Under the pieces are notes generated by a model, which was given only the letters and a program-made list of their open reading frames with translations, was not told the DNA's origin and made no database searches. A program made the position numbers and the translations under genes. Of a stretch of 64,000 nucleotides of DNA, positions 10,101 to 61,448 are shown piece by piece. Source of the stretch: Macrostomum lignano (taxonomy: Eukaryota); the NCBI GenBank assembly GCA_002269645.1, contig NIVC01003075.1, positions 57,233 to 121,232 of the forward strand, in the 5' to 3' direction. The number at the start of each line of letters is the position of its first letter. Positions within the stretch are counted from its first letter, which is position 1.

Positions 10101-13100
10101 GGGGGAATGCTTGCTATCTGGGGATGCTTGCTATCTGGCGTTGCTTGCTATCGGGGGGATGCTTGCTATCTGGGGGATGCTTGCTATCTGCGAGATGCTT
10201 GCTGTCTGAGGGATGCTTGCTATCTGGGGTCTGGGGGAATGCTTGCTATCTGGGGATGCTTGCTATCTGGGGTTGCTTGCTATCGGGGGATGCTTGCTAC
10301 CTGGGGGATGCTTGCAGTCTGGGGGATGCTTACTATCTGGGGTCTGGGGGAATGCTTGCTATCTGGGGGATGCTTGCTATCTGGCGTTGCTTGCTATCGG
10401 GGGATGCTGCTTGCTATCGGGGGATGCTTGTTATCTGGGGGATGCTTGCTATCTGCGGGATGCTTGCTGTCTGGGGGATGCTTACTATCTGGGGTCTGGG
10501 GGAATGCTTGCTATCTGGGGATGCTTGCTATCTGGGGTTGCTTGCTATCGGGGGGATGCTTGCTACCTGGGGGATGCTTGCAGTCTGGGGGATGCTTGCT
10601 ATTTGGGGATTGATGCTTGAATGCTGTCTGAGGATGCTTGCTATCTTGGGATGTTTTGTTTTTAGAGGGAATATCTGTTGTTGTTTTTTGAAGGCTTTAT
10701 TTCGCTGTCTATTTTTTATTTGTAAAAAAGGATTCTATCCAGATGTCCCCCATCGGGGGGCGAAGATTGCTAGTTCAGGTTCTAAAACTAACCTAGTAAC
10801 TACATGTTACTTTCAAATGACAATTTGAAAGCCTAATTCATAGAATAACACACAACCGATATGTATCGAAAGAATACTTTACAAAGGCAAAAAAGTCACT
10901 AACCTATCGTCAGCTGTCCAACTAACGCCTCTAGCTTGTTGACTTGGCCCGGGCGGGCACAGCACCAGAGAGCGCCACAGCTGTCTAGAGTAGCTCCACA
11001 CTCGGCATGTTCCATCTGTACTGCAGCTGGCAAATCTGCCATCCCAGTGGCTATAGGCGACGCTATCAACGCTACCCTTGTGACCCTCGAGTTCGCCGAT
11101 TTTCTCCGGTATTCCAGGCTGGAAGCTGTACACCCGGATGGCGTGATCGGAGCAACCGCCGACAAAGAAGCCGCCGCCGGCGCTGAAGCAGCTGGCCATC
11201 ATGCAGCAGCCGGGCCTGGATCGTTCAATAAACTTGACAGGCCGTTCTTCAAACTTCAAGCTGGCTGGATCGTAGGACCAGAAGCAGACGCAGCCGTCCT
11301 TAGCTGTCGATGCCAGCCATCGTTTCGAACCCCGGACCGACGGGGAAAAAGCTACGGAGATGATAGCCGAAGTGTGCAAGCTCAGCACGGCAATTGGAGC
11401 GCAATTATCTAAACGCCAAACCATGACGCGCTTATCGCATGCGCCGGAAGCTAATAGGCGATTATCGTGCGATACGGTCAGATCGCAGATTTCATTGCGA
11501 TGCCCGCGCAGAGTGGCTAATAGGCGCAACGAACGGCAGCACCAAACTTTAATTAGGGAATCGTCTGCGCCCTGCAATTGATTTTTCAAAAATCTTTAAT
11601 GATTTTTTCTTTTAAAAAGCTATGCATAATACTTTCAAAAGTATAGGAAAAATTTTATAGGAAAAAGAATTAAATTTTTAAAATCCTGTTCCCGATATGT
11701 ATCGAAAACGACACTTTAGTAAGGGAAACATGATTATGTTTATGACATTCTTTTTTAATTAAGGAGAACCTGTACCAACTTTATTATTTTATTGCCGATA
11801 TGTATCGAAATGATCTTAAATTAAGTAAAATCCTATTCTAAAATCTATACTGATTTTAATTAACTTTCTTTACTAAATGTTTAAGATTTTAGCAAGCAAA
11901 AAATATGCTACTTACAGTAATAACAAATCGAGACGTTCTATCGAACACAACGCAGTAGACTGAATTGCCGTGACCAACGATACGTTTGCGAAACTTCAAT
12001 CGTTTGTAGATGGCGCTCTCCAGCTGGTTGCGATGCCGCGGATCGTAGGCGCTTTGTAGAACGCAGTTGGCTAAAAAAAATCAAGCATAAGCGGTACAGA
12101 CTACTTTCATACAAAATGAGGATACAATTTACTTGAAAAAGTGCAACAGACTATTTTGCCTTTTTACGCACTACCTTAATGACACCTGGTCCAAATGAGC
12201 TAGATGTGCAACCGACAGCTCAGCCGCTGCCCGCAGCTATTGCGCGGCGCCTCTGAAGGCTGCGTACGGCTGCTCAGTCCAAGGACTGGGGGGTCGCTAC
12301 ACACAGCCTCAATTACCCCAGCTAATGCTGAACTGAAGCAATGCAGAGTTAAGTGTCTTGCTCCAGTGGGATCGGGAATCGAACCTCCGACCTTAAGTTG
12401 CGAGTCCGACGCTCTAACCACTGGGCTACAACCCCCTATACGCGCTACAGACTACTTTAAATAGTGGAGTTAGTAGAGGTGATAGCATTTGATAGCAGAA
12501 AAATATTTGCAATCAACTTACGAACGTTCCGCTTGGATCGAACACAATTCACTGGCAATCGAAAGCCGCGCTTATGCACTGGAAAGCTCTGACTAAGCGT
12601 CAGATAAATACTGCCGTGATCTGTAAATTTTGTATCGAAGCTTTTTTTAATAAACTGCTAGATAACTACTAGGTTTGCTACATTGAACTAAACAGGTGAT
12701 GCAACTAACAAAAGACAGTATAGCAATGGCACTATTGTGTAGAAGTACCAGCAGCGAGTAGGGATGACACACTATGCAGATGTTTAGAGGATTTATGCAA
12801 GCGTATATACAAAACTAAAAAGAAAATACTAATTCTCAAGCACAATGACCAAATATTAGTGCCGAAACATCCAAACAAAAATATTGCTATATGATTAATT
12901 CTATGCATTCTAACAACTAAAAGAAAAAAGCAAATTAACATAGATAAATACTTCTATAGGGGAGTTATGCTACAACTTGCCTTGCAAAGACACGCCAGTG
13001 GCTCCTGCAATTGCAAGCGTCGAATAAATTTGATTCGATATGAATAGATTAGGATCCATATGAGATGAGATTTGGGTAGATTTAGATTAGGATCCATATG

Positions 13101-16100
13101 AGATGAGATTTGGGTAGATTTAGATTAGGATCCATATGAGATGAGATTTGGGTAGATTTAGATTAGGATCCATATGAGATGAGATTTGGGTAGATTAGGA
13201 TCTATACTATGAGATTAGATTTGGATCTATTAGGATCTATATGAGATTAGCTTTGGATAGATTAGGATTTATATGAGATTAGATTTGGATAGATTAGGAT
13301 CCATATGAGATTACATTTGGATAGATTAGGATCCATATGAGATTAGATTTGGATAGATTAGGATCTATATTAGATTAATTTGGGTAAATTAGGATCTATA
13401 CTATGAGATTAGATTTGGATAGATTAGGATCCATATGAGATTACATTTGGATAGATTAGGATCTATACTATGAGATAAGATTTGGATAGATTAGGATCCA
13501 TATTAGGATCCATATTAGGATCCATTTGGATAGATTAGGATCTATATGAGATTAGATTTGGGTATATTAGAATCTATATGAGATTACATTTGGATAGATT
13601 AGGATCTATATTAGATTAGATTTGGGTAAATTAGGATCTATACTATGAGATTAGATTTGGATAGATTAGGATCCATATGAGATTACATTTGGATAGATTA
13701 GGATCTATACTATGAGATTAGATTTGGATAGATTAGGATCCATATTAGGATCCATTTGGATAGATTAGGATCTATATGAGATTAGATTTGGTTATATTAG
13801 GATCTGGCTCCCTGGAAAGTAATTAGGCAACTCCATCCAGTTTATCAGCAAAAAATCTAAGCCAAAAACACTGCCTTAACACTCACCGGCAGGCGACCGC
13901 AGCAGGGACTGCACAGCTGATCCCAGAAGGCTGGAACAGGCGCCCCCTGTTAGCGCCCGACTGCTGGCATCGGGCGCTGAAGCGCCAGACGGATAAGCGC
14001 GCTCTAGCAGAGGGCCCATAGCTGAGCACACTTCGACCAGATGACTGCCGGTCACGTGAGGATGGAAGCGATCCTGAGAGCGATTGGTGAGTAAAAATAC
14101 AACAAAAATATACTGACCTTCCTTGGAATTTAATATAATCCATAATTATCGCATGGGATAGCAACAAAAAGTACCACATACTAGGATACCATCAAAAAAC
14201 TTATGCATGAAAAATTAACACACAAATCACAAATGCCAATCATGGGATGACAGCATGGAAATCCCTATCATGGGATGACAGCATGGAAATCCCAATCATG
14301 GGATGACAGCACGGAAATCTCAATCATGGGATGACAGCATGGAAATCTCAATCATGGGATGACAGCACGGAAATCCCAATCATGGGTTGACAGCAGGGAA
14401 ATCCCAATCATGGGATGACAGCACGGAAATCCCAATGGAATGGGAGCATGGAAATCCCAATCATGGGATGACAGCATGGAAATCCCAATCATGGGTTGAC
14501 AGCAGGGAAATCCCAATCATGGAATGACAGCACGGAAATCCCAATCATGGGATGACAGCATAAAAATCCCAATCATGGGATGACAGCATGGAAATCCCAA
14601 TCATGGAATGACAGCACGGAAATCCCAATCATGGGATGACAGCAGGGACATCCCAATCATGGGTTGACAGCAGGGAAATCCCAATCATGGGATGACAGCA
14701 TGGAAATCCCAATCATGGGATGACAGCATGGAAATCCCAATCATGGGATGACAGCATGGAAATCCTAATCATGGAATGACAGCACGGAAATCCCAATCAT
14801 GGGATGACAGCACGGAAATCTCAATCATGGGATGACAGCATGGAAATCCCAATCATGGGATGACAGCACGGAAATCTCAATCATGGGATGACAGCATGGA
14901 AATCTCAATCATGGGATGACAGCATGGAAATCCCAATCATGGGATGACAGCATGGAAATCCCAATCATGGGATGACAGCACGGAAATCTCAATCATGGGA
15001 TGACAGCATGGAAATCTCAATCATGGATGACAGCATGGAAATCTCAATCATGGGATGACAGCATGGAAATCCCAATCATGGGATGACAGCACGGAAATCT
15101 CAATCATGGGATGACAGCATGGAAATCCCAATCATGGGATGACAGCATGGAAATCCCAATCATGGGATGACAGCACGGAAATCTCAATCATGGGATGACA
15201 GCATGGAAATCCCAATCATGGGATGACAGCATGGAAATCTCAATCATGGGATGACAGCACGGAAATCCCAATCATGGGATGACAGCATGGAAATCTCAAT
15301 CATGGGATGACAGCATGGAAATCTCAATCATGGGATGACAGCATGGAAATCCCAATCATGGGATGACAGCATGGAAATCTCAATCATGGGATGACAGCAT
15401 GGAAATCTCAATCATGGGATGACAGCATGGAAATCTCAATCATGGGATGACAGCACGGAAATCTCAATCATGGGATGACAGCATGGAAATCCCAATCATG
15501 GGATGACAGCACGGAAATCTCAATCATGGGATGACAGCATGGAAATCTCAATCATGGGATGACAGCATGGAAATCCCAATCATGGGATGACAGCATGGAA
15601 ATCCCAATCATGGGATGACAGCACGGAAATCTCAATCATGGGATGACAGCATGGAAATCCCAATCATGGGATGACAGCATGGAAATCCCAATCATGGGAT
15701 GACAGCACGGAAATCTCAATCATGGGATGACAGCATGGAAATCTCAATCATGGGATGACAGCACGGAAATCTCAATCATGGGATGACAGCATGGAAATCT
15801 CAATCATGGGATGACAGCATGGAAATCTCAATCATGGGATGACAGCACGGAAATCTCAATCATGGGATGACAGCATGGAAATCTCAATCATGGGATGACA
15901 GCATGGAAATCTCAATCATGGGATGACAGCATGGAAATCCCAATCATGGGATGACAGCATGGAAATCTCAATCATGGGATGACAGCATGGAAATCTCAAT
16001 CATGGGATGACAGCAGGGAAATCCCAATCATGGGATGACAGCATGGAAATCTCAATCATGGGATGACAGCATGGAAATCCCAATCATGGGATGACAGCAT

Positions 16101-19100
16101 GGAAATCTCAATCATGGGATGACAGCATGGAAATCTCAATCATGGGATGACAGCATGGAAATCCCAATCATGGGATGACAGCATGGAAATCTCAATCATG
16201 GGATGACAGCATGGAAATCTCAATCATGGGATGACAGCATGGAAATCCCAATCGTGAGATGTTAATTCAAAATTCAAAATTGAGTATTGAGGAGCAACTT
16301 ACAAATTCTTCAAAACTTCGAACATGATTACGTCCAGTCCAATCCTTGCGCGGAGGCAGAAGCTATAAAAAACAAGTTTACCAAAATTTTAAATAAATAG
16401 AATTTTATTAATACCAACTAATTTAATCTGAATTACCAACCTGATTTGTTTCGCAAAGAGCTTTTAGTTGCTAAAAAAATAAAGAAAGTACATTTTTATA
16501 TCAATTGTATGCAAGAAACACATTTGAAAAATTGGAAATTAAAACAATAACAATAATAATATTAAGATCTAGTACTTACAGTAGCAACCTCTGCACATGG
16601 TCCAGTCTCAAGAAACTTTATAATCAAGTAGTAGAGCTCTAAAATTAAAGAAATGTCTATTAAGATTTTGTTTTATAAAAATAGCCTACATTAAACATGT
16701 TAAATTTTTAAGTTGAAGGCATAGATAAGGTTTTTGTGATACTGTGTTATGATATTTCAACTGTAATTTTTGCCACCTTGAATGTGGAGTCTGAATTCAA
16801 AATGGGCATTTGTTGAAGTATCTATAATCCATTAATTATTGAATTCATTTATGAAAAATTTTTATCAATTGTTATGTCTCAGTAATCCACAAGCATGAAG
16901 TCTATATACTTTGTAAATTCTATAGATGAGAAAGACTTATCATTGTAAAGAGTAGGGTAGAGACTTTAGTAATTTATTTAATTTTTAATTTTTTGACTAA
17001 TGCCAACTAGCATTCTGGGCTTTCTGGCTTTCAATTTGGCAACTTGAATTTGGACTCAATTTGTCAAACAACACTACAAATATATTATTTAAAAAAACCT
17101 AGATACCAACCAACCCAATTTAAAAGTATAGTCTTAAATGCTTAATGCATGGATAGATCCAAGAAGAGGGGCCAAGGGGGGGGGCTATAGTGCCATGCCC
17201 AAAAAAAATTGGGCTATACTTTTTTACCCTATAACCATGCAAGGTCTGTTTCCTAATATTGGGTTACAGTTGCTTAGAACAACTTGCCCCAACCCTCAAA
17301 ATTTTCTAGGTCTGCCTTTGGCTTAGTTGGATATTTTTTACTGCAAACTGCAAGCATATGGGGGAAGGAAATAGGTGTCCAATGTAGGTCATAGGAAAAA
17401 AGGTCATCTAATATAGTTTAGACCTATGCTATAAACAGACTCCTAGTTTAAAAGATTTTCTAAATATAAAAAAACATGTAACAATTCTATAAAGTATATA
17501 GAGTGTAGGAAAGTTATTTTAGAACTAGGTATATTTTAAAAAGTTGTCTAAGGAAAAATTGCATTAGACTGCAATAGATTCATCTTGTTTCTAGTGAAAA
17601 AACCTAGGAAAAAATATGACTGAATTATTTACTTAACAAAAGTTATATTTTAAGTAATAAAAGCAGGAATTAATTTGATTTGCTTATTAGTTGCTATTTA
17701 GACTTATTAAAATCTAAATGATTCACTTTATTTCTAACTTAAAAATATTGCATAAAAAGTTAGACAAGAGTTGGACAAGATTTCAATCTCGATTGTCAAT
17801 ATCTTATGACTTTTTTATCTCAATCTCAGTTTTGAGATCTAAAAAATAAAGATTTGATATTATTTGACTACTTGTGACTATGATGTTATGCTGTTATAGT
17901 AATCTTTTAGTTTGTTTCCTGAGATTTTTTCAAGTTATAATCAGTGTTGCAATATAGTGCCATGGTAGAAAATGATGTTTATGGCCAAAAGGAATAGAAA
18001 ATGGTATCAGAAAATGCTCTAGCCTCTAGCTCTTATCTTCTACTACTCTATAAACCACTCTATATACGAGGGGCACTACGAAAGTTTTTAGCTACACCTC
18101 AGCTGTTTGTCCTATCAGATTAATTTTTCACAGGCTTACAGGACCATGATGAATAAAATTTCACGCAAATATCTCGCAGCATTTAGCCGCTAGAGCCAGA
18201 TAACTTCAGCACCTCTGCCCACTTTCCAGCGGAGCTCATGGAACTGAATCGCGAGCACTTTCGTGCCATGATCTTCTATGATTATCGCAGCGGCCTTGAT
18301 TGCCGCCAGTGCCACGAAAGGCTGTCAGCGGCTTTTCCAGAAGCTGCTCCATCACTTGCGACGTCCGTCAGCAACTGGTTCCGCGAGTTTCGTCGTGGCC
18401 GAGACTCGTTGGAAGATGAGGAGCGTACAGGCCGACCTTCAACCGCCACGACACCAGAAACAGTGGCTCGTGTCCGCCAGCTGGTAGAAGCTGACTGGCG
18501 GATAACCTACAAGGAGATCGAGGCATCCCTGGGCATCCATTCGCCGGCCATCGCCAAAATCCTCCACAACCACATCGGCTTGCGCAAGCTGACCAGTTGT
18601 TGGGTGCCCCACCTGCTGAAGCCTGAGCAGAAGCAGGCCAGGGTCGACTGGTGTCGCCAGATGCTGCAGAAGTACAGCGATGGAGCGTCTAAGGCGGTCG
18701 CCGACATTGTAACATGCGACGAGACTTGGGTTTACTGCTACGAGCCAGAGCGCAAGTGCCAGTCGCAGGTGTGGGCGTTTCCGGACGAGGTGCCGCCAAT
18801 GAAGGTCGTGCGAGGCAGGAGCACCGGCAAGCAAATGGTCGCAACTTTTTTCCGTCGCTCAGGTCACGTGGCGACTGTGCGGCTGCTGGACCAGCGCACG
18901 GTGACTGTGGCCTGGTATACCGGCGTCTGCTTGCCGCAGGTCATTCACAGCCTGAGCAGGACGCGTCCGAAGTCAGGTGTCCGAGGCCTGACGCTGCATC
19001 AGGACAACGCGAGCACTCACACGGCTCAGGCAACACGGCAGTTCCTGCAGACTCAGGGACTGCAGCTGACCAGTCACCCGCCATACTCGCCTGATCTGGC

Positions 19101-22100
19101 ACCGTGTGACTTTTTTTGTTCCCTAAAGTCAAGGACTCGCTGCGTGGTCGCCGATTTTCGACTGCAGAGGAGGCTGCTGATGCATTCGACAAGATGGTGG
19201 AAGGGGTGTCGACTTCTGAGTGGCACCACTGCTTTGTCAACTGGTTTGAGAGGATGAGGCGCTGCATCCAGGCTGGTGGAGAATACTTTGAGAAGCTGTG
19301 AAAAGGGGATGTGAACTTAAGAGTCAAAATGGAGCCTGAAGCATTGGGTCCCGATTTCTCTACGCCAATCCCTTCATTTGGAGCCAACTAGCTCCCGTTA
19401 TGCCGAAAACCCGACCACTTTAGCATTTGGGGATCTCTGTGGGGAGAAAGGGGATAAATGGGGATTTCATGTGAACTTAAGGCTCTAGAATGGAGCCTGA
19501 AGCATTGGGTCCCGATTTCTCTACGCCAATCCCTTCATTTGGAGCCAACTAGCTCCCGTTATGCCGAAAACCCGACCACTTTAGCATTTGGGGATCTCTG
19601 TGGGGAGAAAGGGGATAAATGGGGATTTCATGTGAACTTAAGGCTCTAGAATGGAGCCTGAAGCATTGGGTCCCAATTTCTCTACGCCAATCCCTTCATT
19701 TGGAGCCAACTAGCTCCCGTTATGCCGAAAACCCGACCACTTTAGCATTTGGGGATCTCTGTGGGGAGAAAGGGGATAAATGGGGATTTCATGTGAACTT
19801 AAGGCTCTAGAATGGAGCCTGAAGCATTGGGTCCCGATTTCTCTACGCCAATCCCTTCATTTGGAGCCAACTAGCTCCCGTTATGACGAAAACCCGACCA
19901 CTTTAGCATTTGGGGATCTCTGTGGGGAGAAAGGGGATAAATGGGGATTTCATGTGAACTTAAGGCTCTAGAATGGAGCCTGAAGCATTGGGTCCCGATT
20001 TCTCTACGCCAATCCCTTCATTTGGAGCCAACTAGCTCCCGTTATGCCGAAAACCCGACCACTTTAGCATTTGGGGATCTCTGTGGGGAGAAAGGGGATA
20101 AATGGGGATTTCATGTGAACTTAGGGCTCTAGAGTTTATCTCAAAAACGCGCAGTGTTATGCAGCCCTTAAGCCATGTTAAGAATTATTTGTGATTATTT
20201 TGGAAACCAAGAAGCGAGTCAATGGCCCTCACATTTCAGTTTTTGGTTTAGGCCGCGAGTTTTTTACGGTATAATTGCCCAAGACCATAAGGTGCCATCA
20301 GCGCCATTCGGGCTGGCGGGTGGGGAAGCGGTCACCCTCCCCCCACCTTAGGAGGCGACCCGCAATAAATGTTTGGGAGGACCAATCGAATTTTCGCAAA
20401 AATCCAAGCCTGCCTAACTCCACCCTCCCTTGGCTAATCCACCCAGTTGGATCCGCCCCCTCCCCCCTCAGAAAATCTTTATATTATGGTATTTTTCGAC
20501 GACATTCTTTTTTATAGTTTTGAAAACCGATTCGCAAGCACCGGAAGTGTGAGATCAATATTTATATGCGATTTTACCAAGAATTTTGTTTCCTATTTGC
20601 AGATTTTTGTACAGAGAACGACCTGCACATGTTTTTATTGAACCATCAAACGCAATAGCCAGCTTTTTTAACTTGCTTTTGTATTCAACTCTGTTGCTCT
20701 CAAATGTTGTGTTGAGTATGACATCGAAAGCCTGCGTAAGTGGTTTGAAAGTTTTAATGCTCTGCATTATTTTTATGCTTTAGCAAGTTTTAAACAGTTT
20801 TACTTGATAGCTACTTGATTTCAATATTATTCCTGCTAGGTTTTCATTCATAATAGTCTGCTACGAATCAGAGAGTCACTTTATCGTGTAATAGGACTTT
20901 TCCGTTTGCGTTTACTGCGTTTGTTTTCTTTGCATCTGACTTTTCTGATTGCACAGTCATGTCTGGCAATTCATGTCCAAAGTGTGGTCATGCTTTTAGC
21001 AAAACTAGCAACTTAACTAAACATCTGCAGACGAGCAGATATGGATCTTCGCCTTCAAAAACTACTCTTGTTCCGCCGCCAGTTTTACGCAACGCTAGAG
21101 AAGCGCGGTGCTTTTTAGACTCAGCAGATGAATACATCCGATGTTTTCTGAATCCTAATATTTTCCCTAGCATTAGTAAAGACACTTTAGTAGAGCTCGA
21201 GCAGGTTACTGGCATGGATCGAAACCAGTTTAATGATTTTTGCGCGTCTCTTCCGGATACTATACGATTGCGCTTTCTGTCTAAGGAGAATCGCGTGTTT
21301 CTTTATCTGAAGAAGATACGACAAGGTCAAAGCTTCGAAGCTCTGGCTTTTGACTTTAACATATCTGCCCGTCGAGCTTGCGATATTTTTTGGGAACTAG
21401 CAGAGCAGCAGTATCGCCATGATCCTTTCCACCCACGGTTCCTTGCCAGAAGCGATGATCCATCTGGCTTGTTGAAACGCTGTGTGGTGAGAGACGAGTT
21501 CATCCTTGAAGTTTTCAATCGACTGCTAAAAGGAAAGCAGCTGGTATTGCTTGTCGGAGACCACACCTATTTTTATCTTTCTAAGAGCAGCTGCCACCAC
21601 GCTCAGACCCGAACCTACTCTGCTCACAAAAGTAGTAATGTGACAAAAAAGATGGCTATTGTAAACAGCCATGGACACATAATCTACTGTGGGCCGCTAA
21701 CAGGCGCTATCTCACCAGTTCTTGGCGATGGAAACCTGACGGCACTACAACTCGAAATGGAGGCAAGTGGCACAATTGAAGCAGATTTACTACGAATTCT
21801 GTGCTCAGGTTGCAGTGCCTTTCAGGTTGTCGCTATCTTTGATAAAGGCTATACACGCCAGCCCTGCTCTCCAATGAGTTTAAACTTCGTTGATTTTGTA
21901 AAGAGAGAGAGCGAAGGCAATACATCGCTCCTCTTTCCCACTGGTCCAGGTGACGAGGTGCTAAACGAGAATTTTGAACTTGTTGAGAACCAAGTTCCAA
22001 AACAAGGACTACCAATCACTGGAAAGCTAACGGCATTGGAAGCCAACACAAGTCGCTGTGCAACAATGTTTCGTTATCTTGTCGAGTGCAGCTTTGCTGC

Positions 22101-25100
22101 AATCAAGCAAGACAAGTGCATCAACGAAAGACATGAACCATATCAGTGGCTGCAGCCTGCGATGTTCTGTGATCGCAGCCGCCTCGATGTTGTCATCGAG
22201 AATTCTATGGCCATGTACAATCGCACGCATCCGGGTTTTGAGTCGCATAGAAAGCTTCTGTCATCATGGTCCGGGCTCTCGCTCTTTGAATACGGCCAGA
22301 ACTTTACACAACGTGTGTTTTTATCAAACGAACTGGATGAAATTGAGCAGTTGGGCTACAACTGCGATCTAACGCGAATTCCTACTGCTAGCTCCAGGAT
22401 TTGGACCGTGGTTGATCCGCTAGATCCTCAAAGCTCTGGGTTTCCCAGAATCTGTCCCGAAAATCTAGAGGAGGTGTCAGTGGGACCATATCAGCTTGAA
22501 CAGTCTGACAGCTACATTCAAAATATTCGAGTCAGGGAAGTACTCGGCAGCTATGATGGTGACTCCTGGCAACAGTTTGAGGCTCTAACATCAGAATTAC
22601 CCAGTCATTTGAAATGCTGGAAGTTCCTGCAAGTGACTCAGCCAACCAACTGGAGCAGCAAATTCGGCCAATGGCAACCATCATGGATCTATTTGGCTGC
22701 TGTCTTCTCGCGTCACAAGTCCAAGGTTTATCGCGTACTTCTTCGAATCTGCAAAACTCCCTATGGCAACCGATTTGGCTTTCGAGATTCTGGCCTGCAA
22801 TTTCTACATGGCTACTACTCGACATCAGTTGCCGGTAGCAAAACAGCAGGTTGTGACTGCCATGTCATGGCCGTGCTGAAGATATTAGGCTGCTACGCCT
22901 ACGAGCCTCAAGGTTACAAGAATTCCGGTGCAAGAGTTCGTTTCGTTGATTCTGTCCTTCCGCGCGTACTCATTTCCAGATTATATGGCAGTGTAGATGA
23001 AACAACACCTCAGGCTCACCAAAACAGCCAACGGGACCGGAGCCAGCATCCCCAACATCATCGTCAAGATCAGCAGAGTCAACATGAGACTTCACAGTCA
23101 GACTTTGGCCGTTCGCAGAATCCGAGACTTGTCGGTCTCTCAAATAGAGGTCTGCAATGTTACGCTAATGTTGTCGTGCAGCTCTTTCACTTTCTTCAAT
23201 ACGACATGAAGATCATATTGCCTGTGAATGGCGGTATGGTACATAACGCCATGAGAGACCTGCTGACCGCCATGGCGACAGGGCCTGCCAGCGTAGATCG
23301 GTTTTTGGAAGCATTGAGAGGCCAACTACCAGATCAATTCGCGCCTAGACAGCAGCACTGCATGAATGAACTGCTGCAGTGCGTTCTGCAGCGAATGGAA
23401 CTGGAGCCGCGCAGTCTCACAGAGTTTTCTCTGGTTCGAACTTGCCAGAGCTGCCTCAGCTCCATTGAAGAGCTTCCCAATGGAACCATCGACGGCAGAG
23501 TGATTTCAATCGCATTAAAGCAGTTTTCAAGTGCACCAATCAACATTGAGAACCTCTACAATGCGTGGACAACACCACAGCGTTTGCAATGTGTGAATCC
23601 AGAGTGCAATGGTGAGTCCGTCCAAGAAGTAAAAGCTGTTGCCGGGAGAGTGACACTGCTGCACATTAACCAGACGGGATCTAATGGGCACAAGCTGCAC
23701 ACGAGTATCAATTGGTCAGATCGAGCAGGAAGTGTCTCGTCCCTTGGTTGCCCAGTGTTTACTATTTCGCATCAAGGCCGCTCTATGCAAGAAGGGCACT
23801 ACACCTGCTGCATCTTTAAAAGCAACGTCTGGTATAAAATCGATGACATGAGGATTGAACCAGGTTGGAATCCATTTGTTCATGAAACAGGATTCCTTAC
23901 ATTGATCGCAATGGTGCAGGCTTAGGCAGTTAGTGAGCTGCTACTAGTATGACGACAGCTAAAGCGCATTTTGCTTTCAAGATGACAAACATTAAAGTAA
24001 ATTTTTTTCAAAACCTTCAACTTGTTAATTAAAAATATTTTATATTTGCTTCCGACTAATAAAGGAGTGCTGCAATAATAAATATAATAATACGAGTGTA
24101 CAAAGACATTACATGCATTTAAAATACAATTGCTCTTTGACTTCTCATTCATTAAATAGGAGTACAGGGCCAAATTTCCAGATGGTTATAGTCATCTGGG
24201 CCGACAAGTTATCGATTCCAGTCGGTTTCGTCTGCTGGCCTCATTCGAGCTCCATTCTGGAGCCTTAAGTTCACATGAAATCCCCATTTATCCCCTTTCT
24301 CCCCACAGAGATCCCCAAATGCTAAAGTGGTCGGGTTTTCGGCATAACGGGAGCTAGTTGGCTCCAAATGAAGGGATTGGCGTAGAGAAATCGGGACCCA
24401 ATGCTTCAGGCTCCATTCTAGAGCCTTAAGTTCACATGAAATCCCCATTTATCCCCTTTCTCCCCACAGAGATCCCCAAATGCTAAAGTGGTCGGGTTTT
24501 CGGCATAACGGGAGCTAGTTGGCTCCAAATGAAGGGACTGGCATAGAGAATTTTCGGCATAAGGCTCCATTCTAGAGCCTTAAGTTCACATGAAATCCCC
24601 ATTTATCCCCTTTCTCCCCACAGAGATCCCCAAATGCTAAAGTGGTCGGGTTTTTGGCATAACAGGAGCTAGTTGGCTCCAAATGAAGGGATTGGCATAG
24701 AGAAATCGAAGGGATAAAGTGGTCGGGTTTTCGGCATAACGGGAGCTAGTTGGCTCCAAATGAAGGGATTGGCATAGAGAAATTGGGACCCAATGCTTCA
24801 GGCTCCATTCTAGAGCCTTAAGTTCACATGAAATCCCCATTTATCCCCTTTCTCCCCACAGAGATCCCCAAATGCTAAAGTGGTCGGGTTTTCGGCATAA
24901 CGGGAGCTAGTTGGCTCCAAATGAAGGGATTGGCGTAGAGAAATCGGGACCCAATGCTTCAGGCTCCATTCTAGAGCCTTAAGTTCATATGAAATCCCCA
25001 TTTATCCCCTTTCTCCCCACAGAGATCCCCAAATGCTAAAGTGGTCGGGTTTTTGGCATAACAGGAGCTAGTTGGCTCCAAATGAAGGGATTGGCATAGA

Positions 25101-28100
25101 GAAATCGAAGGGATAAAGTGGTCGGGTTTTCGGCATAATGGGAGCTAGTTGGCTCCAAATGAAGGGATTGGCGTAGAGAAATCGGGACCCAATGCTTCAG
25201 GCTCCATTCTAGAGCCTTAAGTTCACATGAAATCCCCATTTATCCCCTTTCTCCCCACAGAGATCCCCAAATGCTAAAGTGGTTGGGTTTTCGGCATAAC
25301 GGGAGCTAGTTGGCTCCAAATGAAGGGATTGGCGTAGAGAAATCGGGACCCAATGCTTCAGGCTCCATTGTAGAGCCTTAAGTTTACATGAAATCCCCAT
25401 TTATCCCCTTTCTCCCCACAGAGATCCCCAAATGCTAAAGTGGTCGGGTTTTCGGCATAACGGGAGCTAGTTGGCTCTATATGAAGGGATTGGCGTAGAG
25501 AAATCGGGACCCAATGCTTCAGGCTCCATTTTGACTCTTAAGTTCACATCCCCTTTCAGCTTCATAGATGCTTCCATTTAGACATAGCTAAAAACTTTTG
25601 TAGTGCCCCTCGGATCACTACTTTTGTTGCATTATCTATTGCTTTATCTACTATTCTAGCTACTGCTCTATTTAATTTTCTATCAACTATTCTATCTAGT
25701 GCCCAGAGCCAGAGGTATTATATTGTGGTACCAAATCAAACTTGAAAATAGAATTGCAAAACAAACTAGAGACAAGCTTACCAATGTTATTATACTTACA
25801 TTTGATATACACCAAGTTATTAACAAGCTCAAATATTAAATAATTATTGTTATCTTTCTATTATCATCATTGTATACATTTAACAAGTGATAATAATAAT
25901 ATTAATAAATAAAAATATAAATAAATAGGCCAAGTAGATGCAAGTTAGGCTTAATCTTGAATATCAATTATCATATATGCCCAACACATATCCAATCCAT
26001 ATCCATCCAAACCAAATGAGTGAAATGGCCACTGGCCAAGGTAAGTTGCAAAATCAAAAATGCAAAACAATGAAAAATTGGAAAAAAGAAGGAAGAGGAA
26101 GAGAAAGAGAAAAGAAAGGAAGGAGAAAAAAGAGAAGAGAAAGAGAAAGAAAAGAAAGAGAAAAAGGCAAGAAAAGTCATACAAAATAAAAATTAAGTAG
26201 CAATCAGGGGAACTAAATTGCAATTGTGAGAAATTAAATTGCAAATCTAGACAAAACTAAGTTGCACTAGATGGGTGAAATTTTGAGGTTGGGCATATAT
26301 GTCAATTATCTTAAAGTTAAAAGTATAGGCCTAGATCTCAAGTCTAGAAAAATCTTGAAAATTTGATATCCCTATTAGAATAAATAAATTAGGCCTATAT
26401 AGAAAACCTTTGGACATGTAGCATTAGGCCCATTCCATATAAGATGGACATATTTGGAAAATAGAAAAAAGTCAATATTTTTGCTTGTCATTGCTTTATC
26501 AGCCATTTTTTTTTACCAAATCTTTTTTGTATATAATGTAAACAATATAAGAATAAATAAATGATAAAATGTTGGATTAGTATGTTATCAATTGGCAAAA
26601 AGTTATTTTTGTAAAAATTGGACATTTTCTAAGCAAAAGACATCATTCAGTTTATGTACCTTTTAAAAACAAATAGAAAGCTTTAGAAGGTTAAAACAAA
26701 CTATATATAAAATTATAGTACTTGCATTATCAGATAAAAACATTAGCAACCATATAATGCATTATATTTTTAATATATTAGTACTTCAGTTACTGAATTG
26801 ACAGAAAAAATTATGTTACGACCATAATGTTACGACCATAAGGCTGCCTTTTCTTTTGTATTTTTGTTGCCTTTTTGAGTTTATATATTCTAATAAAAGA
26901 GTATGACTTCTAAAGATGTTCTTAGTCAAATTTGAAAAAAATATTGCAAAATATAAAAAATGAAGAATGTTATAAGACTTTTACCTTTTAGTTTCTATAT
27001 GTCAAAAATCCTGTTGTTACGACCATAAGTGCCATTCAAGGTTTAATAGCATCTATACTAATGATGATATCTATATGAAACTTTATAAACATATTCTTGA
27101 CAAAATAATTCTTCATTCAAAATATTGGTTTAGTATATTCTATTATTAGATTTCATTTTATAAGTAAAAATAGTCTGTCATGTTACGACCATAATTATAT
27201 GGAATGGCCTATTAGGTCTAAAATTGTAGCTCAAAAATGAGACATGACAAAAAACATTAACTTTTGCACTGAATATAGGCATAGTACTAATTAGATGATG
27301 AGGCATTTAGCCTTGATAAGAGTCCCTATAGGAAAAAGTTGTAAAACTGCGGACGGTGTCTGGCATACTTTTGAAATTTTTCTAAAGCATAGCGCGCGCA
27401 CAGGCGCATCGTCTGCACACACGCTGCCCTTTATTACTGGCTGCTGCTCTAGCAAATACATATACATGGAAATGGGTATAATGCCTCTGTTGAAGGGGCT
27501 TATAAACTCGTAATTTATTAAGCTTTGAGATGTTCTGAAAATTCAATTTCAATTTTCCATAGTTTGAATTTTTTTAGAGCGAATTTCAATTTCAAAAAAA
27601 ATTTAGAAGTGAAAATTTTGGTAGTGTCTAAAAAGTCACTAAAAATAAAACTACTTTCTACTACATATACATGTATTACTTTTTGCTCAAGCAATAAATT
27701 GAAAGTAAAAAAGTGAGTGTTGATCATACTAAACTTTGTTTTTCTAAATTATGATTTTGGGAAATTTCAATTTTGATTTTGGAAAGTTAGCAAATTTTGA
27801 TTTTGACAAAACTGCAGATTTTTTGGAACATCTCTAATAATCCTAAAGCGCAGTAAAATAGTTTGACTCTTTTCTAAAGTGCGCGTCCACGGGTTTTTAA
27901 CATTTATTCTAATAGGGATAAGAGTCATACTCATTGATATTCCTGCCATTTACTAAAAACTATGCCAAACATGCATACTTGCTAGATGCCAATGTTTGAG
28001 GATTATAATCCAAAAAAATTTAATAAAATTTTAGAATAATACTATACTAGTCAATTTTTAGTGATATCAAATCTAAACTTTGAATTTATAATATCTTTAA

Positions 28101-35496: not shown

Positions 35497-36145
35497 ATGG
35501 TGGTACCAATAGACGTATATATAGACGTACACGTGTGGGCAGGGATTTCAATGCGAGGCAGGACCCAGCTGGTTTTCTTAGACGCAAACGTGAACGGCGA
35601 TGAGTACGCTCGTTTGCTGCAGACGCATCTGCTCCCTTTTGTTAACAACCACTTTGGTGGCGTCGCAAACTGCATACTGCAGGACGATAATGCACCGGCG
35701 CACCGGGCAGCAGCTGTCAGCGAACTCAAGGACCAGCTGCACCTGCGTACTCTTCGGTGGCCTTCAAGATCCCCTGATATGAACCCAATTGAACATGTCT
35801 GGGACTTTATCAAGCGGAGTGTTCAACGGCAGAATCCGCCGCAGACAGTCGCTGAACTGCGAAACGCTGTTGCTAACGCGTGGCAGGAAATTCCCCAGGA
35901 CTTTTTTCGACGCCTTGTTCTGGGAATGCCACGTCGAGTCAACGCCCTGTTACTTGCGAGAGGAGGCTACACGCGTTTCTGAAGCTCGATTTGAACCATA
36001 GACTATGCGCTTTGACTCTTCTGAGTGAGTTGATTTTTCTTCTAGTTAGAGTGTTGCGTTTTAAATGTTGCTGAGTGTATGTCCGAAGGGCAAAAAGTTC
36101 ATGAGACAATAAAAAGGGAATGCTTTAACTTTTTTGATGATGCTG
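35497..36145 (+). mobile_element. 5'-truncated Tc1 (DD34E) element fragment
   Basis: VWAGIS...LQDDNAPAH...WPSRSPDMNPIEHVW...GGYTRF-stop(35982), with D-34-E spacing. The right end ...AACTTTTTTGATGATGCTG|TA is at 36145. No matching left TIR was found. Confidence 0.9.
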
Positions 36146-38430: not shown

Positions 38431-39359
38431 CTCAGCAGATCTCAGCTAAAGCAGAATTGAGTCACTTTCTAAGGGCCTTGCAGAGGCTGTTTAGATTCTA
38501 CAGACCAGAATTAGACAATAAAACCATGAATTAATTATTCATCCAGGCACGAGTGCTTCATTTTAAAGAAAATATCTAAAGATAAGCAAACGAAATAGTG
38601 CGAGAGAGAGAGAGAGAGAGAAGTCAATTTAGGAACTGTGACATAGCAGTGACGAGTGCAGTTAATCTCCATGCGAGCATCTCAGAATTTGCTGGATTAC
38701 CTCCTGGATGCCAATAAGATGACTGGGAATCGCAGATGTAGGTGAGAGGGCGACACCGATGCCATCCCCATGGGGTATTTTGCGTGCCTGGCTTAAACCT
38801 GCTCTCTCGTACTCTTCATATCTCAGTGAAAGCCTGCTAGTGTTGTATACGCAGAGTAGACATGGGAGGCATGAACATAAGCTAAACCCAGCGAATTTCG
38901 GGTTTTCCCCCTAGGGGCCTAGGGGATGGGAATACGAGAGTGAAAATTACAATATCTCCGGGCCTATCTGCTATGCACAGTTCTGAGTCCTGGCTTTGAG
39001 CATCGGGCTGATGAAATATTAAACAGTTTATTGGCTGAAATCTACCTAACTGTCCAAACGTACTTGCAGCAACTGCTCTTTCTTGACTCCTCTATTTCGA
39101 CTAGCTTTCTGTAGTCTGTATGTGAAACTCTCTGTGTCGTTAGTGAACTAAATCTTGAATTAGAAAGTGTTCTAATAGAAAGATTTGGATGAACGAAATA
39201 TTTTGCTAGAAAACTGCATCATCTTCAGAGGTTTCGACAGCGGCACATACGAGTCGAACGTCTTTTAAAAAGGGCGCTTAACGCTTAGATACTCGTACTG
39301 TCGCTTGATAGCAAAATTCATAAATGAATTCACAAACAACTGAAAATTAACAAAATACG

Positions 39360-39950
39360 CCACTTCACTTTAACATCGTTTCCATTGACGTTAATTCTCT
39401 TAACATCGCTGCACTTAACGTCACTTCACTTAGCGTTACTTCACTCTAACATCGTTTCCATTAACGTCACTTCACTTAACGTCACTTCAATTACCATCGC
39501 TTCCATTAACGTCACTTCACTTAAAATCACTTTACTTACGATCGTTTCCATTAACGTCACTTCACTTAGCATCACTTTACTTAACGTCACTTCACTTAAC
39601 GTCACTTTACTTACTGTCGCTTCCATTAATGTCACTTCACTTAACATCACTTCACTTAACATCGTTTCCATTAACGTCACATCACTTAACATCACTTCAC
39701 TTGACGTCACTTCACTTAACGTCACTTCACTTAACATCACTTCACTTGACGTCACTTCACTTAATGTCACTTCACTTACTATCGCTTCCATTAACGTCAT
39801 TTCACTTAACATCACTTCACTTAACAACACTTTACTTAACATCGTTTCCATTAGCGTCACTTCACTTAACGTCACTTCACTTCACATAAATTCATTTAAC
39901 GTCACTTTGCTTAACATCGCTTCACTTAACATTGTTGCACTTAACGTCGC
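39360..39950. repeat. Minisatellite, 15 bp unit (TCACTTCACTTAACG)
   Basis: About 38 degenerate copies; the overlapping ORFs are artefacts. Confidence 0.93.
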
Positions 39951-40810: not shown

Positions 40811-44900
<4,090 letters not shown>

Positions 44901-45049
44901 GTTAGCGTTAAATGCAACGGTAGGTTCTGACACAAATTCGGGATTGATAACTAATTTTTTATTCATAAATGCTTGATTCTATTTAGCTTAGGTGTACGCA
45001 AGGAATTTTAATTGGAGGGGCCGAAACAGTTCCAATATTTGCTGTCTAG

Positions 45050-54653: not shown

Positions 54654-61448
<6,795 letters not shown>

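What the first reader, a model, noticed from the sequence alone, without database searches (positions are those of the whole stretch)
20959..23925. PHIS/Spy-type transposase fused in-frame to an apparently active USP deubiquitinase domain
One uninterrupted 988-aa ORF joins a complete DDE_Tnp_4 transposase (D201, D295, E376) to a peptidase C19 domain through a Q/H-rich linker. Seen in sequence: Cys box GLSNRGLQC734YANVVVQ, a QQ(H) box, candidate fingers-subdomain Zn ligands CQSC and CVNPEC, His box GH947Y, and WYKID962D. Established knowledge: some transposons carry cysteine proteases (Ulp1/OTU in Ginger and Mutator elements, OTU in some Helitrons). I do not recall a USP-family enzyme described on a PHIS/Spy transposase, but I could not search to confirm this. 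Inference: the element may remove ubiquitin from its own transposase to escape proteasomal restriction, or from histones at target or donor chromatin, making it a self-protecting transposon.
Basis: partly seen in the sequence, partly recalled or inferred. Interest (0 to 1): 0.92.

Follow-up and report, generated by a model that had tools for sequence, protein, structure and literature searches.

The report
Flatworm transposon carrying a deubiquitinase domain
An apparently intact jumping gene in the flatworm Macrostomum lignano makes one protein that joins its cut-and-paste enzyme to a ubiquitin-removing enzyme; the same fusion recurs in many distant relatives, so it looks like a functional accessory, though what it does is untested.

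Summary
Window 20959-23925 (+) is one uninterrupted 988-aa ORF.

The C-terminal 265 aa is a USP (peptidase C19) domain. It scores above the Pfam UCH cutoff. A confident AlphaFold model matches only USP catalytic domains in the PDB. The catalytic Cys, His and Asp and four zinc-ribbon cysteines are present.

The N-terminal ~700 aa is a divergent DDE_Tnp_4 (PHIS) transposase. Pfam does not call the DDE domain directly, but homologues establish it.

The ORF sits in a complete 6,249-bp element (19305-25553). Its ends are 98% identical inverted repeats built from 161-bp units. It lies inside a mariner copy, between AAA and TTT, with no target duplication, which is the Spy hallmark.

The fusion is not a one-off. 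At least ten lineages, at 22-76% identity, carry the same collinear transposase-USP protein with catalytic residues kept. They come from flatworm-like reads and marine metagenomes.

Transposon-borne deubiquitinases are known (OTU, Ulp1, VTD). A C19 plus IS5-like transposase was noted once, in Trichomonas. No USP on Spy/PHIS elements is described in the papers I could search. I rate it a new variant of a known kind. The proposed self-protection role is untested.

The parts
19305..25553 (+). Complete Spy-like PHIS DNA transposon, 6,249 bp
   Evidence: The inverted-repeat similarity starts exactly at GGGGATGTGAAC on both ends. The outer 300 nt of the two arms are 295/300 identical. There is no other copy in the window.
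19305..20133 (+). Left terminal inverted repeat: about 5 tandem 161-bp units, each repeating the terminal motif ATGTGAACTTAAG
   Evidence: TRF finds period 161, 5.1 copies, 98% matches. The motif recurs at 161-nt steps. The inverted pairs are listed.
24244..25553 (-). Right terminal inverted repeat: about 8 copies of the same unit, with 77-bp and 238-bp variants
   Evidence: 8 motif copies.
19301..19304 (.). Left target half-site, ...GTGAAAA| (the AAA side)
   Evidence: Sequence read. No direct repeat is shared with the right flank, so there is no target-site duplication.
25554..25556 (.). Right target half-site, |TTTCAGC (the TTT side)
   Evidence: The joined flanks read GAAGCTGTGAAAA|TTTCAGCTTC, an imperfect palindrome.
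20959..23925 (+). Single intronless 988-aa ORF encoding the transposase-USP fusion
20971..21033 (+). N-terminal C2H2-type zinc finger (aa 5-25)
   Evidence: Pfam zf-C2H2 scores 21 bits, below cutoff. The best PDB sequence hit is a consensus zinc finger. The finger is conserved in P0001, P0003, P0005 and P0006.
21277..21390 (+). HTH_Tnp_4-like helix-turn-helix (aa 107-144)
   Evidence: Pfam scores 25.4 bits against a cutoff of 27. 14 of 20 outgroup relatives hit HTH_Tnp_4.
21544..22158 (+). DDE_Tnp_4-type catalytic core. D201 is at nt 21559, D295 at 21841 and E376 at 22084.
   Evidence: D201, D295 and E376 are (nearly) invariant across 33 homologues. Homologue P0007 and 20 of 20 outgroup proteins hit Pfam DDE_Tnp_4. 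The R(3)E motif is present.
22246..22998 (+). C-terminal transposase extension (aa ~430-680) with LGPYQ and a degenerate SWIM-like GCDCH motif (aa 631-636)
   Evidence: Conserved in all relatives, whose consensus is CxCxxGxRxxGCCxHV. It models confidently. There is no significant PDB match.
23011..23118 (+). Q/H-rich low-complexity linker (aa ~685-720)
   Evidence: pLDDT is below 50 at both model edges. The sequence is not conserved between lineages; it is Q-rich in L139 and K/R-rich in P0008.
23128..23922 (+). USP / peptidase C19 domain (aa 724-988). Key residues are N729, C734, H947 and D962/D963. The zinc-ribbon cysteines are C829, C832, C878 and C883.
   Evidence: Pfam UCH scores 42.5 bits against a cutoff of 23.9. 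The AF2 model has pLDDT 87.8 and pTM 0.85. The top 50 Foldseek PDB hits are all USP catalytic domains, E~1e-17, TM 0.65-0.71.
24058..24082 (+). Two AATAAA polyadenylation-type hexamers, 133-152 nt after the stop codon
   Evidence: Pattern search. This is sequence only, not evidence of use.
18067..19304 (+). 5' part of the host mariner element that the transposon interrupts. Its transposase ORF ends ...GEYFEKL* at 19302 and carries one frameshift.
   Evidence: The mariner TIR at 18067-18094 pairs with 25585-25612, 27/28. Pfam hits are HTH_48 and DDE_3.
25554..25612 (+). 3' remainder of the same mariner, ending in its TIR
   Evidence: Without the insertion the mariner would be 1,297 bp.

Best explanation
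**What it is**
- This is an autonomous, probably recently active DNA transposon of the PHIS superfamily in the genome of Macrostomum lignano.
- It behaves like a Spy element: it inserted precisely between AAA and TTT without a target-site duplication.
- Its single protein runs: C2H2 finger, helix-turn-helix, DDE catalytic core, a large C-terminal extension, a flexible linker, then a compact USP deubiquitinase domain.

**What is shown**
- The domain identities, the intact catalytic residues, the complete element structure, and the recurrence of the fusion over deep divergence.

**What is inferred**
- The N-terminal ~700 aa binds the repeated 161-bp end units and performs cut-and-paste transposition.
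- The tethered USP is a catalytically competent accessory module that removes ubiquitin in the immediate neighbourhood of the transposase-DNA complex.
- The most likely target is the transposase itself or its partners, which would stabilise them against proteasomal turnover.
- The next most likely targets are ubiquitin marks of chromatin or DNA-damage signalling at the excision or insertion site.
- The USP was probably captured once, early in this clade, and later lost in several branches. It is therefore helpful rather than essential for transposition.
For: **Architecture**
- ORF and residues.
- USP domain: Pfam UCH above cutoff; confident AF2 model; all top-50 Foldseek hits are USPs.
- Transposase: the DDE triad is (nearly) invariant in 33 homologues, and relatives are called DDE_Tnp_4 by Pfam.

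**A real mobile element**
- TIRs are 98% identical. The insertion splits a mariner whose two TIRs flank it. The flanks are AAA|TTT with no duplication.
- A lineage only 51% identical (L001) has the same terminal 17-mer, directly after AAA.

**Recurrence**
- Collinear transposase plus USP occurs in P0013, the P0008 family, the P0035 family, P0087, P0049, P0060, P0093 and P0114. It also occurs in P0001+P0009 (overlapping fragments of one lineage) and in L139, which is 76% identical and crosses the junction.
- Catalytic Cys, His and Asp/Asn and all four zinc-ribbon cysteines are kept across these lineages at only 17-37% identity.
- The top 150 hits of the exhaustive search include other transposon-type USPs. 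No hit that was looked up carries a host-USP name, which fits a single capture.

**Phylogeny**
- All USP-bearing transposases fall in one clade, interleaved with USP-less ones.
- 85 relatives end within a few residues after the SWIM-like motif, so the USP is a discrete C-terminal add-on.

**Analogy**
- OTU/Ulp1 occur on Ginger1 and Mutator transposases, and OTU/VTD on Helitrons. The VTD domains are experimentally active deubiquitinases and are proposed to protect transposition proteins (PMC2836005; PMC9741609).
Against: - There is no activity, expression or splicing evidence of any kind.
- The geometry of the catalytic triad could not be measured.
- Only one copy lies in the window, and only one complete insertion site was seen. 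No empty site was recovered.
- In the one family with several near-identical sequences (P0008), dN/dS is 0.15-0.20 for the transposase part but 0.46-0.73 for the USP part. The USP figure rests on very few changes (6.5 synonymous, 18.5 non-synonymous). Recent constraint on the USP is therefore weak or unproven.
- USP-less sister lineages exist (P0003, P0005, P0006, P0007), so the domain is dispensable for transposition as such.
- The marine 'families' (P0035 certainly, P0008 probably) are one locus sampled in many metagenomes, not demonstrably many insertions. Some fusion proteins could be domesticated host genes.
- Clade support in the quick NJ tree is modest (62%).
Confidence: 0.6

Rival explanations
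1. The USP acts on chromatin or DNA-repair substrates rather than on the transposase. Candidates are ubiquitinated H2A/H2B, PCNA or FANCD2-type marks. Its role would be to steer repair of the double-strand break left by excision, or to open or mark target chromatin.
For: The domain is tethered to a DNA-bound enzyme by a flexible linker. In the P0008 lineage the linker is strongly basic and looks like a nuclear-localisation signal. Among the best structural matches are USP46, USP12, USP1 and USP21, which from general knowledge act on histone or repair-factor ubiquitin. Bao et al. proposed a link between transposon-borne ubiquitin/SUMO proteases and DNA repair (PMC2836005).
Against: Foldseek scores do not discriminate among USP subfamilies; all are E~1e-16 to 1e-17. 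No substrate-recognition module was found. Nothing here separates this from the self-protection model.
Confidence: 0.2
2. The USP domain is a passenger, or a slowly decaying captured host fragment, with no role in transposition. Its motifs persist only because the capture is carried along with an active transposase.
For: dN/dS of the USP part is 0.46-0.73, against 0.15-0.20 for the transposase part, in the P0008 family. The USP part diverges faster than the transposase part: 36% against 51% identity to the P0001/P0009 lineage, and 48% (linker plus USP start) against 76% to L139. Several related lineages lack it.
Against: A neutral passenger would not keep the catalytic Cys, His and Asp plus four zinc ligands, and an open frame, across lineages that share only 17-37% identity. 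The domain still folds confidently as a complete USP.
Confidence: 0.1
3. The protein is a domesticated host gene (a transposase-derived deubiquitinase), not a working transposon protein.
For: The P0035 and P0060 proteins are found as one and the same locus, with identical flanks, in many ocean samples. This is what a single-copy host gene would look like. Their transposase parts are under purifying selection (for P0008).
Against: For the window copy this does not fit. It has near-identical long inverted repeats. It is inserted inside another transposon at a Spy-type target. Decayed paralogues also exist: L001, L139, and M. lignano fragment P0017. The DDE triad is intact.
Confidence: 0.07
4. 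The USP is a non-catalytic ubiquitin-binding module (a pseudo-enzyme) that targets the transposase to ubiquitinated chromatin.
For: The domain is unusually compact at ~265 aa. One lineage has Ser instead of the oxyanion Asn (P0035), and one has Ser at the first acidic position (P0019).
Against: The catalytic Cys and His are present in every lineage with coverage. The window copy has the complete set.
Confidence: 0.03

Closest known systems
Spy transposons of the PHIS superfamily (Han et al. 2014, PMC4122938; cgSpy/cvSpy, PMC11304231)
   Same: - Insertion between AAA and TTT without a target duplication.
- A single ORF.
- An N-terminal DNA-binding region plus a DDE core of about 700 aa.
- Variable, sometimes very long, inverted repeats.
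- Termini that start with G (GGGG here; GGGCC, GAGCC and GGACC in active Spy elements).
   Different: - It carries an extra ~265-aa USP domain; the main texts of the 2014 Spy paper and the 2015 PHIS survey contain no mention of 'protease' or 'ubiquitin'.
- DDE spacing is D(93)D(80)E, against the published D(79-80)D(44-62)E.
- The long ends here are built from 161-bp tandem subrepeats, whereas the 2014 paper reports no subrepeat structure.
- The host is a flatworm, a phylum not listed in either survey.
- Placement relative to reference Spy sequences was not tested.
Ginger1 (OTU or Ulp1) and Mutator-like (Ulp1) transposases with C-terminal cysteine protease domains (Bao et al. 2010, PMC2836005)
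   Same: A DDE-type transposase carries a ubiquitin- or SUMO-directed cysteine protease at its C-terminus, in one ORF, as a conserved feature of a transposon lineage.
   Different: The transposase superfamily differs (integrase-like or MuDR against IS5/Harbinger-like). The protease clan member differs (OTU/Ulp1 against USP/C19).
Helitron/Helentron OTU and VTD deubiquitinase domains (Erven et al. 2022, PMC9741609); UCH among domains captured by Helitron-like elements (PMC11417382)
   Same: These are transposon-encoded deubiquitinases. VTDs were shown to be active and are proposed to protect transposition proteins from degradation. A UCH (Pfam) domain is listed among Helitron-like captures.
   Different: They belong to rolling-circle elements with RepHel, not a cut-and-paste DDE transposase. 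VTD is a different fold class. The UCH mention is a list entry with no analysis.
Trichomonas vaginalis XP_001314237.1: transposase_11 (IS5-type) plus Peptidase C19, mentioned in Bao et al. 2010 citing Gladyshev & Arkhipova 2009
   Same: It has the same two kinds of domain, an IS5-related DDE transposase and a C19/USP domain, in one protein.
   Different: It is a one-sentence remark about a protist protein. It involves Pfam transposase_11, not DDE_Tnp_4. No element structure, conservation or distribution was described.
ISL2EU and PIF/Harbinger groups of PHIS (Han et al. 2015, PMC4482050)
   Same: They share the DDE_Tnp_4 core and HTH. The nearest Pfam-recognisable relatives (for example Mercenaria XP_053380497.1) share the whole core plus the SWIM-like C-terminal module.
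   Different: Those groups make 2-bp (AT) or 3-bp (TWA) duplications. They usually carry a second ORF (YqaJ or Myb/SANT), and ISL2EU has a THAP domain. None of these is seen here.

Membership tests
USP / peptidase C19 (Pfam UCH PF00443) | Profile match above the curated threshold | tested here: met
   42.5 bits against a cutoff of 23.9. Relatives P0013, P0009, P0008, P0035, P0087 and P0049 also pass.
USP / peptidase C19 (Pfam UCH PF00443) | Cys box with the catalytic Cys and oxyanion Asn; His box with the catalytic His; Asp/Asn of the triad | tested here: met
   N729, C734, H947 and D962/D963. They align with USP14 and USP21. They are conserved across fusion lineages.
USP / peptidase C19 (Pfam UCH PF00443) | USP catalytic fold (thumb-palm-fingers) with a zinc ribbon in the fingers | tested here: met
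   AF2 pLDDT 87.8. The top 50 Foldseek PDB hits are all USP catalytic domains, TM 0.65-0.71. C829, C832, C878 and C883 are conserved. Triad distances were not measured.
USP / peptidase C19 (Pfam UCH PF00443) | Isopeptidase activity on ubiquitin conjugates | not testable with these tools
   This needs biochemistry.
PHIS superfamily (IS5/Harbinger-type DDE_Tnp_4 transposases) | Direct Pfam DDE_Tnp_4 match in this protein | tested here: not met
   No DDE_Tnp_4 hit even at E<=1.
PHIS superfamily (IS5/Harbinger-type DDE_Tnp_4 transposases) | Homology to recognised DDE_Tnp_4 proteins with a conserved D...K...D...D...P...R(3)E signature | tested here: met
   P0007 hits DDE_Tnp_4 at 32.4 bits against a cutoff of 24.8. 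20 of 20 weaker relatives hit it. D201, D257, D295, R372 and E376 are (nearly) invariant. The spacings are larger than published because of insertions (own count).
PHIS superfamily (IS5/Harbinger-type DDE_Tnp_4 transposases) | N-terminal HTH | tested here: inconclusive
   HTH_Tnp_4 scores 25.4 bits, just under the cutoff of 27. 14 of 20 relatives hit it.
Spy group | Insertion between AAA and TTT with no target-site duplication | tested here: met
   The window flanks are ...GAAAA|element|TTTCAG... with no direct repeat. The L001 terminus also follows AAA. This rests on one complete site, with no empty site found.
Spy group | Single long ORF, no second gene | tested here: met
   Only the 988-aa ORF is present. 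Other ORFs in the element are at most 104 aa and overlap it or lie in repeats. Some relatives (P0008 and P0035 families) do have a separate upstream ORF.
Spy group | Terminal consensus 5'-GGANNNNG-3' | tested here: inconclusive
   The terminus is GGGGATGTG (GAGGATGTC in L001), so it starts with G but is not an exact match. The published consensus is only 'relatively well conserved'.
Spy group | Catalytic spacing D(79-80)D(44-62)E | tested here: not met
   The spacing is D201-(93)-D295-(80)-E376.
Spy group | Clustering with reference Spy transposases in a DDE phylogeny | not tested
   No reference Spy, ISL2EU or Harbinger sequences were available. The supplements hold only tables and primers.
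ISL2EU group | 2-bp AT duplication, THAP domain, YqaJ second ORF | tested here: not met
   The flanks are AAAA / TTT. There is a C2H2 finger, not THAP. There is no second ORF.
PIF/Harbinger group | 3-bp TWA duplication and a Myb/SANT second ORF | tested here: not met

The most novel reading that the evidence does not exclude
An old clade of Spy-like cut-and-paste transposons in marine and freshwater animals carries its own USP-class deubiquitinase as a counter-defence module. Its job would be to reverse a ubiquitin-dependent host restriction of transposition, such as degradation of the transposase or ubiquitin signalling at the break. If so, ubiquitination would be a general, so far unrecognised, layer of host control over DNA transposons. 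The intact copy in the transgenesis-capable flatworm M. lignano would be a direct experimental handle on it.
Probability: 0.3. Interest if true: 0.8.

Novelty: new variant of a known kind. Interest (0 to 1): 0.62.

Why it matters
- Several unrelated transposon classes have independently picked up ubiquitin- or SUMO-directed proteases. Why they did so is still unknown, and only the Helitron VTDs have been tested.
- This case adds the largest human deubiquitinase class (USP) to that list, on a cut-and-paste transposase family.
- Close cousins of that family (cgSpy) are already active in human cells and are being developed as gene-transfer tools.
- The element here is compact and intronless, with defined ends. 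Wild type, C734A and USP-deleted versions could be compared directly in the published Spy donor/helper assay.
- If the USP raises transposase stability or integration efficiency, that would bear on how hosts restrain transposons and on vector design.
- If it does nothing, the finding is a curiosity of domain shuffling.

Tried and rejected
1. **Word-indexed homology search.** With the ORF and with a fusion-family alignment it returned almost nothing beyond P0001 and P0002. The exhaustive search was what revealed the family.
2. **Protein-pattern scan of metagenome contigs.** The third ran and found no relative.
3. **Scan for the shared terminal 17-mer GRGGATGTSAACTTARG in metagenomes.** It gave 120+ hits. 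None encodes a relative, none extends the similarity, and the preceding 3 nt show no AAA preference. They are chance or unrelated repeats.
4. **Ends of related elements.** Neither inverted-repeat searches nor a targeted AAA|TIR...TIR|TTT scan found clear termini in L002, L003 or L127, and the targeted scan found none in L129 or L134 either. The contigs probably do not span both ends.
5. **Using the many P0035 and P0008 contigs as independent insertions.** I rejected this. The copies share identical flanks or simply overlap, so they are one locus sampled repeatedly.
6. **dN/dS on the USP part.** It was only possible in the P0008 family, with too few substitutions to be decisive. The window's closest relatives are too diverged at the DNA level; blastn finds no hit to L139.
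7. **Fold search of the transposase model against the PDB.** There was no significant match. The best hits were the P-element and Tn5 transposases at E~0.1.
8. **Bacterial-type promoter and terminator scan.** It is not informative for an animal genome.
9. **NCBIfam scan.** No hits; it is a prokaryote-oriented library.
10. **Exact look-up of the 988-aa protein in public gene calls.** It is not on record.
11. **Gladyshev & Arkhipova 2009.** The paper could not be read because it is not held.

Full report
**1. The observation**

Window 20959-23925 (+) is one 988-aa reading frame from ATG to stop. The nearest upstream in-frame stop is at 20854.
- D201, D295 and E376.
- The Cys box at 726-741, with N729 and C734.
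- QQHC at 798-801, CQSC at 829-832 and CVNPEC at 878-883.
- H947 and D962/D963.

Pfam reports UCH (PF00443) at 42.5 bits against a cutoff of 23.9. HTH_Tnp_4 scores 25.4 (cutoff 27) and zf-C2H2 scores 21 (cutoff 25.2), both just under threshold. DDE_Tnp_4 is not reported at all. So the ORF and the USP part are confirmed directly, while the transposase identity needed more work.

**2. The USP domain**

- Sequence search of the PDB gives only weak hits (USP21 and USP14, E~0.01). They align the Cys box and the His box in register.
- An AlphaFold2 model of aa 700-988, built on 16 related sequences, is confident: mean pLDDT 87.8 and pTM 0.85. Only the linker and one loop are disordered.
- Foldseek against the PDB returns 258 matches at E<=0.001. 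The top 50 are all USP catalytic domains (USP46, USP8, USP1, USP21, USP18, USP12, USP2, USP4/15, USP14 and others), at E~1e-17 to 1e-15 and TM 0.64-0.71.
- The domain is a compact but complete USP. I could not measure triad distances because coordinates are not returned.

**3. The transposase part**

- The exhaustive search of 1.84 billion representatives found 202 proteins at E<=1e-3.
- In an alignment of 33 of them, D201, D295 and E376 are (nearly) invariant. So are D257, R372 (giving the R-x3-E motif) and several Gly, Asn and Pro residues.
- Relative P0007 hits Pfam DDE_Tnp_4 above threshold. Twenty weaker relatives all hit DDE_Tnp_4, and 14 of them hit HTH_Tnp_4. One is Mercenaria mercenaria XP_053380497.1.
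- The family shares a large C-terminal extension with an 'LGxYQ' motif and a SWIM-like CxC...GCCxHV finger. That finger is degenerate in the window protein (GCDCH, aa 631-636).
- This part also models confidently (pLDDT 87.2) but has no significant PDB counterpart. The best hits are the P-element and Tn5 transposases at E~0.1.
- PHIS-superfamily membership is therefore established by homology, not by a direct profile hit.

**4. The element**

The ORF lies between long inverted arrays of a 161-bp unit. There are about 5 units on the left (19305-20133) and about 8 on the right (24244-25553). Each unit repeats the terminal motif ATGTGAACTTAAG. These are plausibly multiple transposase-binding sites, which is an inference.

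The outer 300 nt of the two arms are 295/300 identical. Both ends begin GGGGATGTGAAC.

The flanks read ...GAAGCTGTGAAAA| and |TTTCAGCTTC..., with no direct repeat. That is the Spy hallmark of insertion between AAA and TTT without a target duplication (PMC4122938; PMC11304231).

The insertion sits inside a mariner copy. The mariner's 28-bp inverted repeats lie at 18067-18094 and 25585-25612. Its transposase frame ends (...GEYFEKL*) two bases before the insertion. Without the insertion the mariner would be 1,297 bp.

A relative only 51% identical (contig L001, a JGI metagenome) has the same 17-nt terminus (GAGGATGTCAACTTAGG), directly after AAA.

No second gene is present. AATAAA hexamers follow the stop codon at 24058 and 24077.

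**5. Host**

An intronless SH2 plus tyrosine-phosphatase ORF at 50762-52333 (-) is 100% identical to Macrostomum lignano BOX15_Mlig029219g2. The window is therefore from this flatworm.
- The 988-aa protein is not in public gene calls.
- A diverged fragment of the family is embedded in an M. lignano UniProt model (P0017 = A0A1I8IYQ6, 67% identical over aa 361-478). So the family has older copies in this genome.
- Flatworms are not among the phyla listed for Spy: arthropods, cnidarians, molluscs and a rotifer.

**6. Is the fusion a one-off?**

No. Collinear transposase plus USP proteins were found in these lineages:
- P0013: 955 aa, aligned over aa 76-982.
- The P0008 family: 1048-1050 aa.
- The P0035 family: 1119 aa.
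- P0114: 1134 aa.
- P0087: 865 aa.
- P0049 (1639 aa) and P0060 (1842 aa), which also carry a long N-terminal C2H2 region.
- P0093.

Three further points support recurrence:
- P0009 starts with the same residues that end contig L001 and continues into a USP domain. The P0001 lineage therefore has the fusion too.
- L139, from Logan run SRR31252258, is 76% identical in the transposase part. It runs across the junction into an almost identical Cys box (GLRNRGLQCYANVVVQLF), although that copy has a stop and a frameshift.
- Across these lineages the USP parts share only 17-37% identity. They nevertheless keep the catalytic Cys, His and Asp/Asn and all four zinc-ribbon cysteines. The minor exceptions are Ser for the oxyanion Asn in P0035 and Ser at the first acidic position in P0019.

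Of the relatives retrieved, 85 end within a few residues of the SWIM-like motif and lack a USP. In a quick neighbour-joining tree of the core, all USP-bearing proteins fall in one clade (bootstrap 62%), interleaved with USP-less ones. This fits an early capture with later losses, but it is not proof.

**7. Caveats on 'families'**

Most relatives come from TARA Oceans and other marine metagenomes.
- The ten P0035 contigs share identical right flanks.
- The P0060 contigs are 99.98% identical throughout.
- The P0008 contigs simply overlap.

They are therefore one locus of a widespread organism sampled repeatedly, not shown to be separate insertions. Both ends of these elements were not captured.

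Between P0008 variants, dN/dS is 0.15-0.20 in the transposase part but 0.46-0.73 in the USP part. The USP figure rests on only 6.5 synonymous and 18.5 non-synonymous changes. Recent constraint on the USP is therefore weaker or unresolved, whereas the deep conservation of its active site argues for long-term function.

**8. Mechanism**

Shown:
- A complete element.
- An intact transposase signature.
- An intact USP signature and fold.
- Recurrence of the fusion.

Inferred:
- The USP is an accessory deubiquitinase working next to the transposase-DNA complex through a flexible linker.
- The linker is Q/H-rich here, Q-rich in L139 and strongly basic in P0008.

I rank the possible roles in this order:
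1. Protection of the transposase or its partners from ubiquitin-dependent turnover.
2. Action on chromatin or repair-factor ubiquitin at the break.
3. Passenger domain, domesticated gene or pseudo-enzyme, all of which rank lower.

The ranking follows the proposal made for the experimentally active Helitron VTD domains (PMC9741609) and the general idea in Bao et al. 2010 (PMC2836005). Nothing in my data separates the first two.

**9. Comparison with what is known**

- Transposon-borne cysteine proteases of the ubiquitin or SUMO system are established. Examples are OTU/Ulp1 on Ginger1, Ulp1 on Mutator-like elements, and OTU/VTD on Helitrons.
- For the C19/USP class I found two mentions. One is a single sentence on a Trichomonas vaginalis protein with an IS5-type transposase_11 domain plus Peptidase C19. 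The other is UCH in a list of domains captured by Helitron-like elements.
- In the 2014 Spy paper and the 2015 PHIS survey, full-text searches for 'protease' and 'ubiquitin' found nothing. Further searches combining ubiquitin-protease, USP, C19 or UCH terms with transposon or transposase terms (including Harbinger and ISL2EU) found nothing relevant.
- One lead remains. Table S1 of the cgSpy paper lists Hydra vulgaris Hyvu-Spy-1 with a single 963-aa ORF, against about 700 aa for other Spy elements. That size would fit an unnoticed USP fusion. I could not test it.

**10. Verdict**

The finding is real and correctly read. It is a new variant of a known kind: a transposon-encoded deubiquitinase, here of the USP class, on a Spy-like PHIS transposase, conserved across a deep clade.

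It fails two published Spy descriptors, the DDE spacing and the exact terminal consensus. It meets the defining target-site behaviour. I therefore call it Spy-like and do not file it as a Spy member.

Interest is moderate to high. The biology is untested, but the element is compact, apparently intact and sits in a tractable animal. The obvious experiments are straightforward.

Noticed in passing
window 18067-19304 and 25554-25612: A mariner element (HTH_48/DDE_3 transposase, one frameshift near 19120, 28-bp inverted repeats) is split by the Spy-like insertion. The insertion point lies 2 nt after the mariner stop codon. The joined target GAAGCTGTGAAAA|TTTCAGCTTC is an imperfect palindrome.
   Followed up: partly
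window 19305-20133 and 24244-25553: The long inverted ends are arrays of a 161-bp unit, each carrying a copy of the terminal motif. The original Spy paper states that long Spy ends show no subrepeat structure. The right arm has extra 77-bp and 238-bp variants and 8 units against 5 on the left.
   Followed up: partly
window 50762-52333 (-): An intronless 523-aa SH2 plus tyrosine-phosphatase (PTPN11/SHP-like) ORF is 100% identical to Macrostomum lignano BOX15_Mlig029219g2. This identified the host. Pfam detected only one SH2 family hit (two stretches). It is only about 41% identical to a second M. lignano paralogue.
   Followed up: partly
window 61046-61513 (+): An ORF fragment matches the ligand-gated ion channel domain (Lig_chan). 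It is probably an exon of an ionotropic glutamate receptor gene.
   Followed up: no
window 35497-35982 (+): A 161-aa ORF matches DDE_3. It is the remnant of another Tc1/mariner-type transposase.
   Followed up: no
window 1-811, 1349-5577, 7192-9366, 9522-10653, 13032-13805, 14231-16261, 39357-39948, 42517-42815, 45045-46660: The window is unusually rich in long minisatellite arrays with periods of 15-32 bp, up to 169 copies and 4.2 kb. Several of them create spurious long ORFs (for example 9441-10828 and 45012-46694).
   Followed up: no
L002 202-1944, L124 115-1893, L129 1568-2932: Marine relatives have a separate upstream ORF. In the P0008 family it is a 580-592-aa protein with C2H2 fingers, ending 63 bp before the transposase-USP ORF. 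In the P0035 family it is a 454-aa protein with no Pfam hit. In P0049 and P0060 an equivalent N-terminal region is fused, giving proteins of 1639 and 1842 aa.
   Followed up: partly
P0183 / P0016 / P0182 (no locus fetched): In one related cluster a weak USP-profile match lies N-terminal to, or overlapping, the transposase match instead of C-terminal. It could be a different arrangement or a spurious hit.
   Followed up: no
L001 2580-2582 and ~2741-2746: The metagenomic relative is a decayed copy. It has TGA where the window protein has Trp565, and a frameshift near aa 619. Its contig ends at aa 708, just before the USP would begin.
   Followed up: yes
PMC11304231, Supplementary Table S1: Hydra vulgaris Hyvu-Spy-1 is listed with a single 963-aa ORF in a 3,517-bp element with 102 copies. 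That is far longer than the roughly 700 aa typical of Spy transposases and similar in size to the USP fusions found here.
   Followed up: partly
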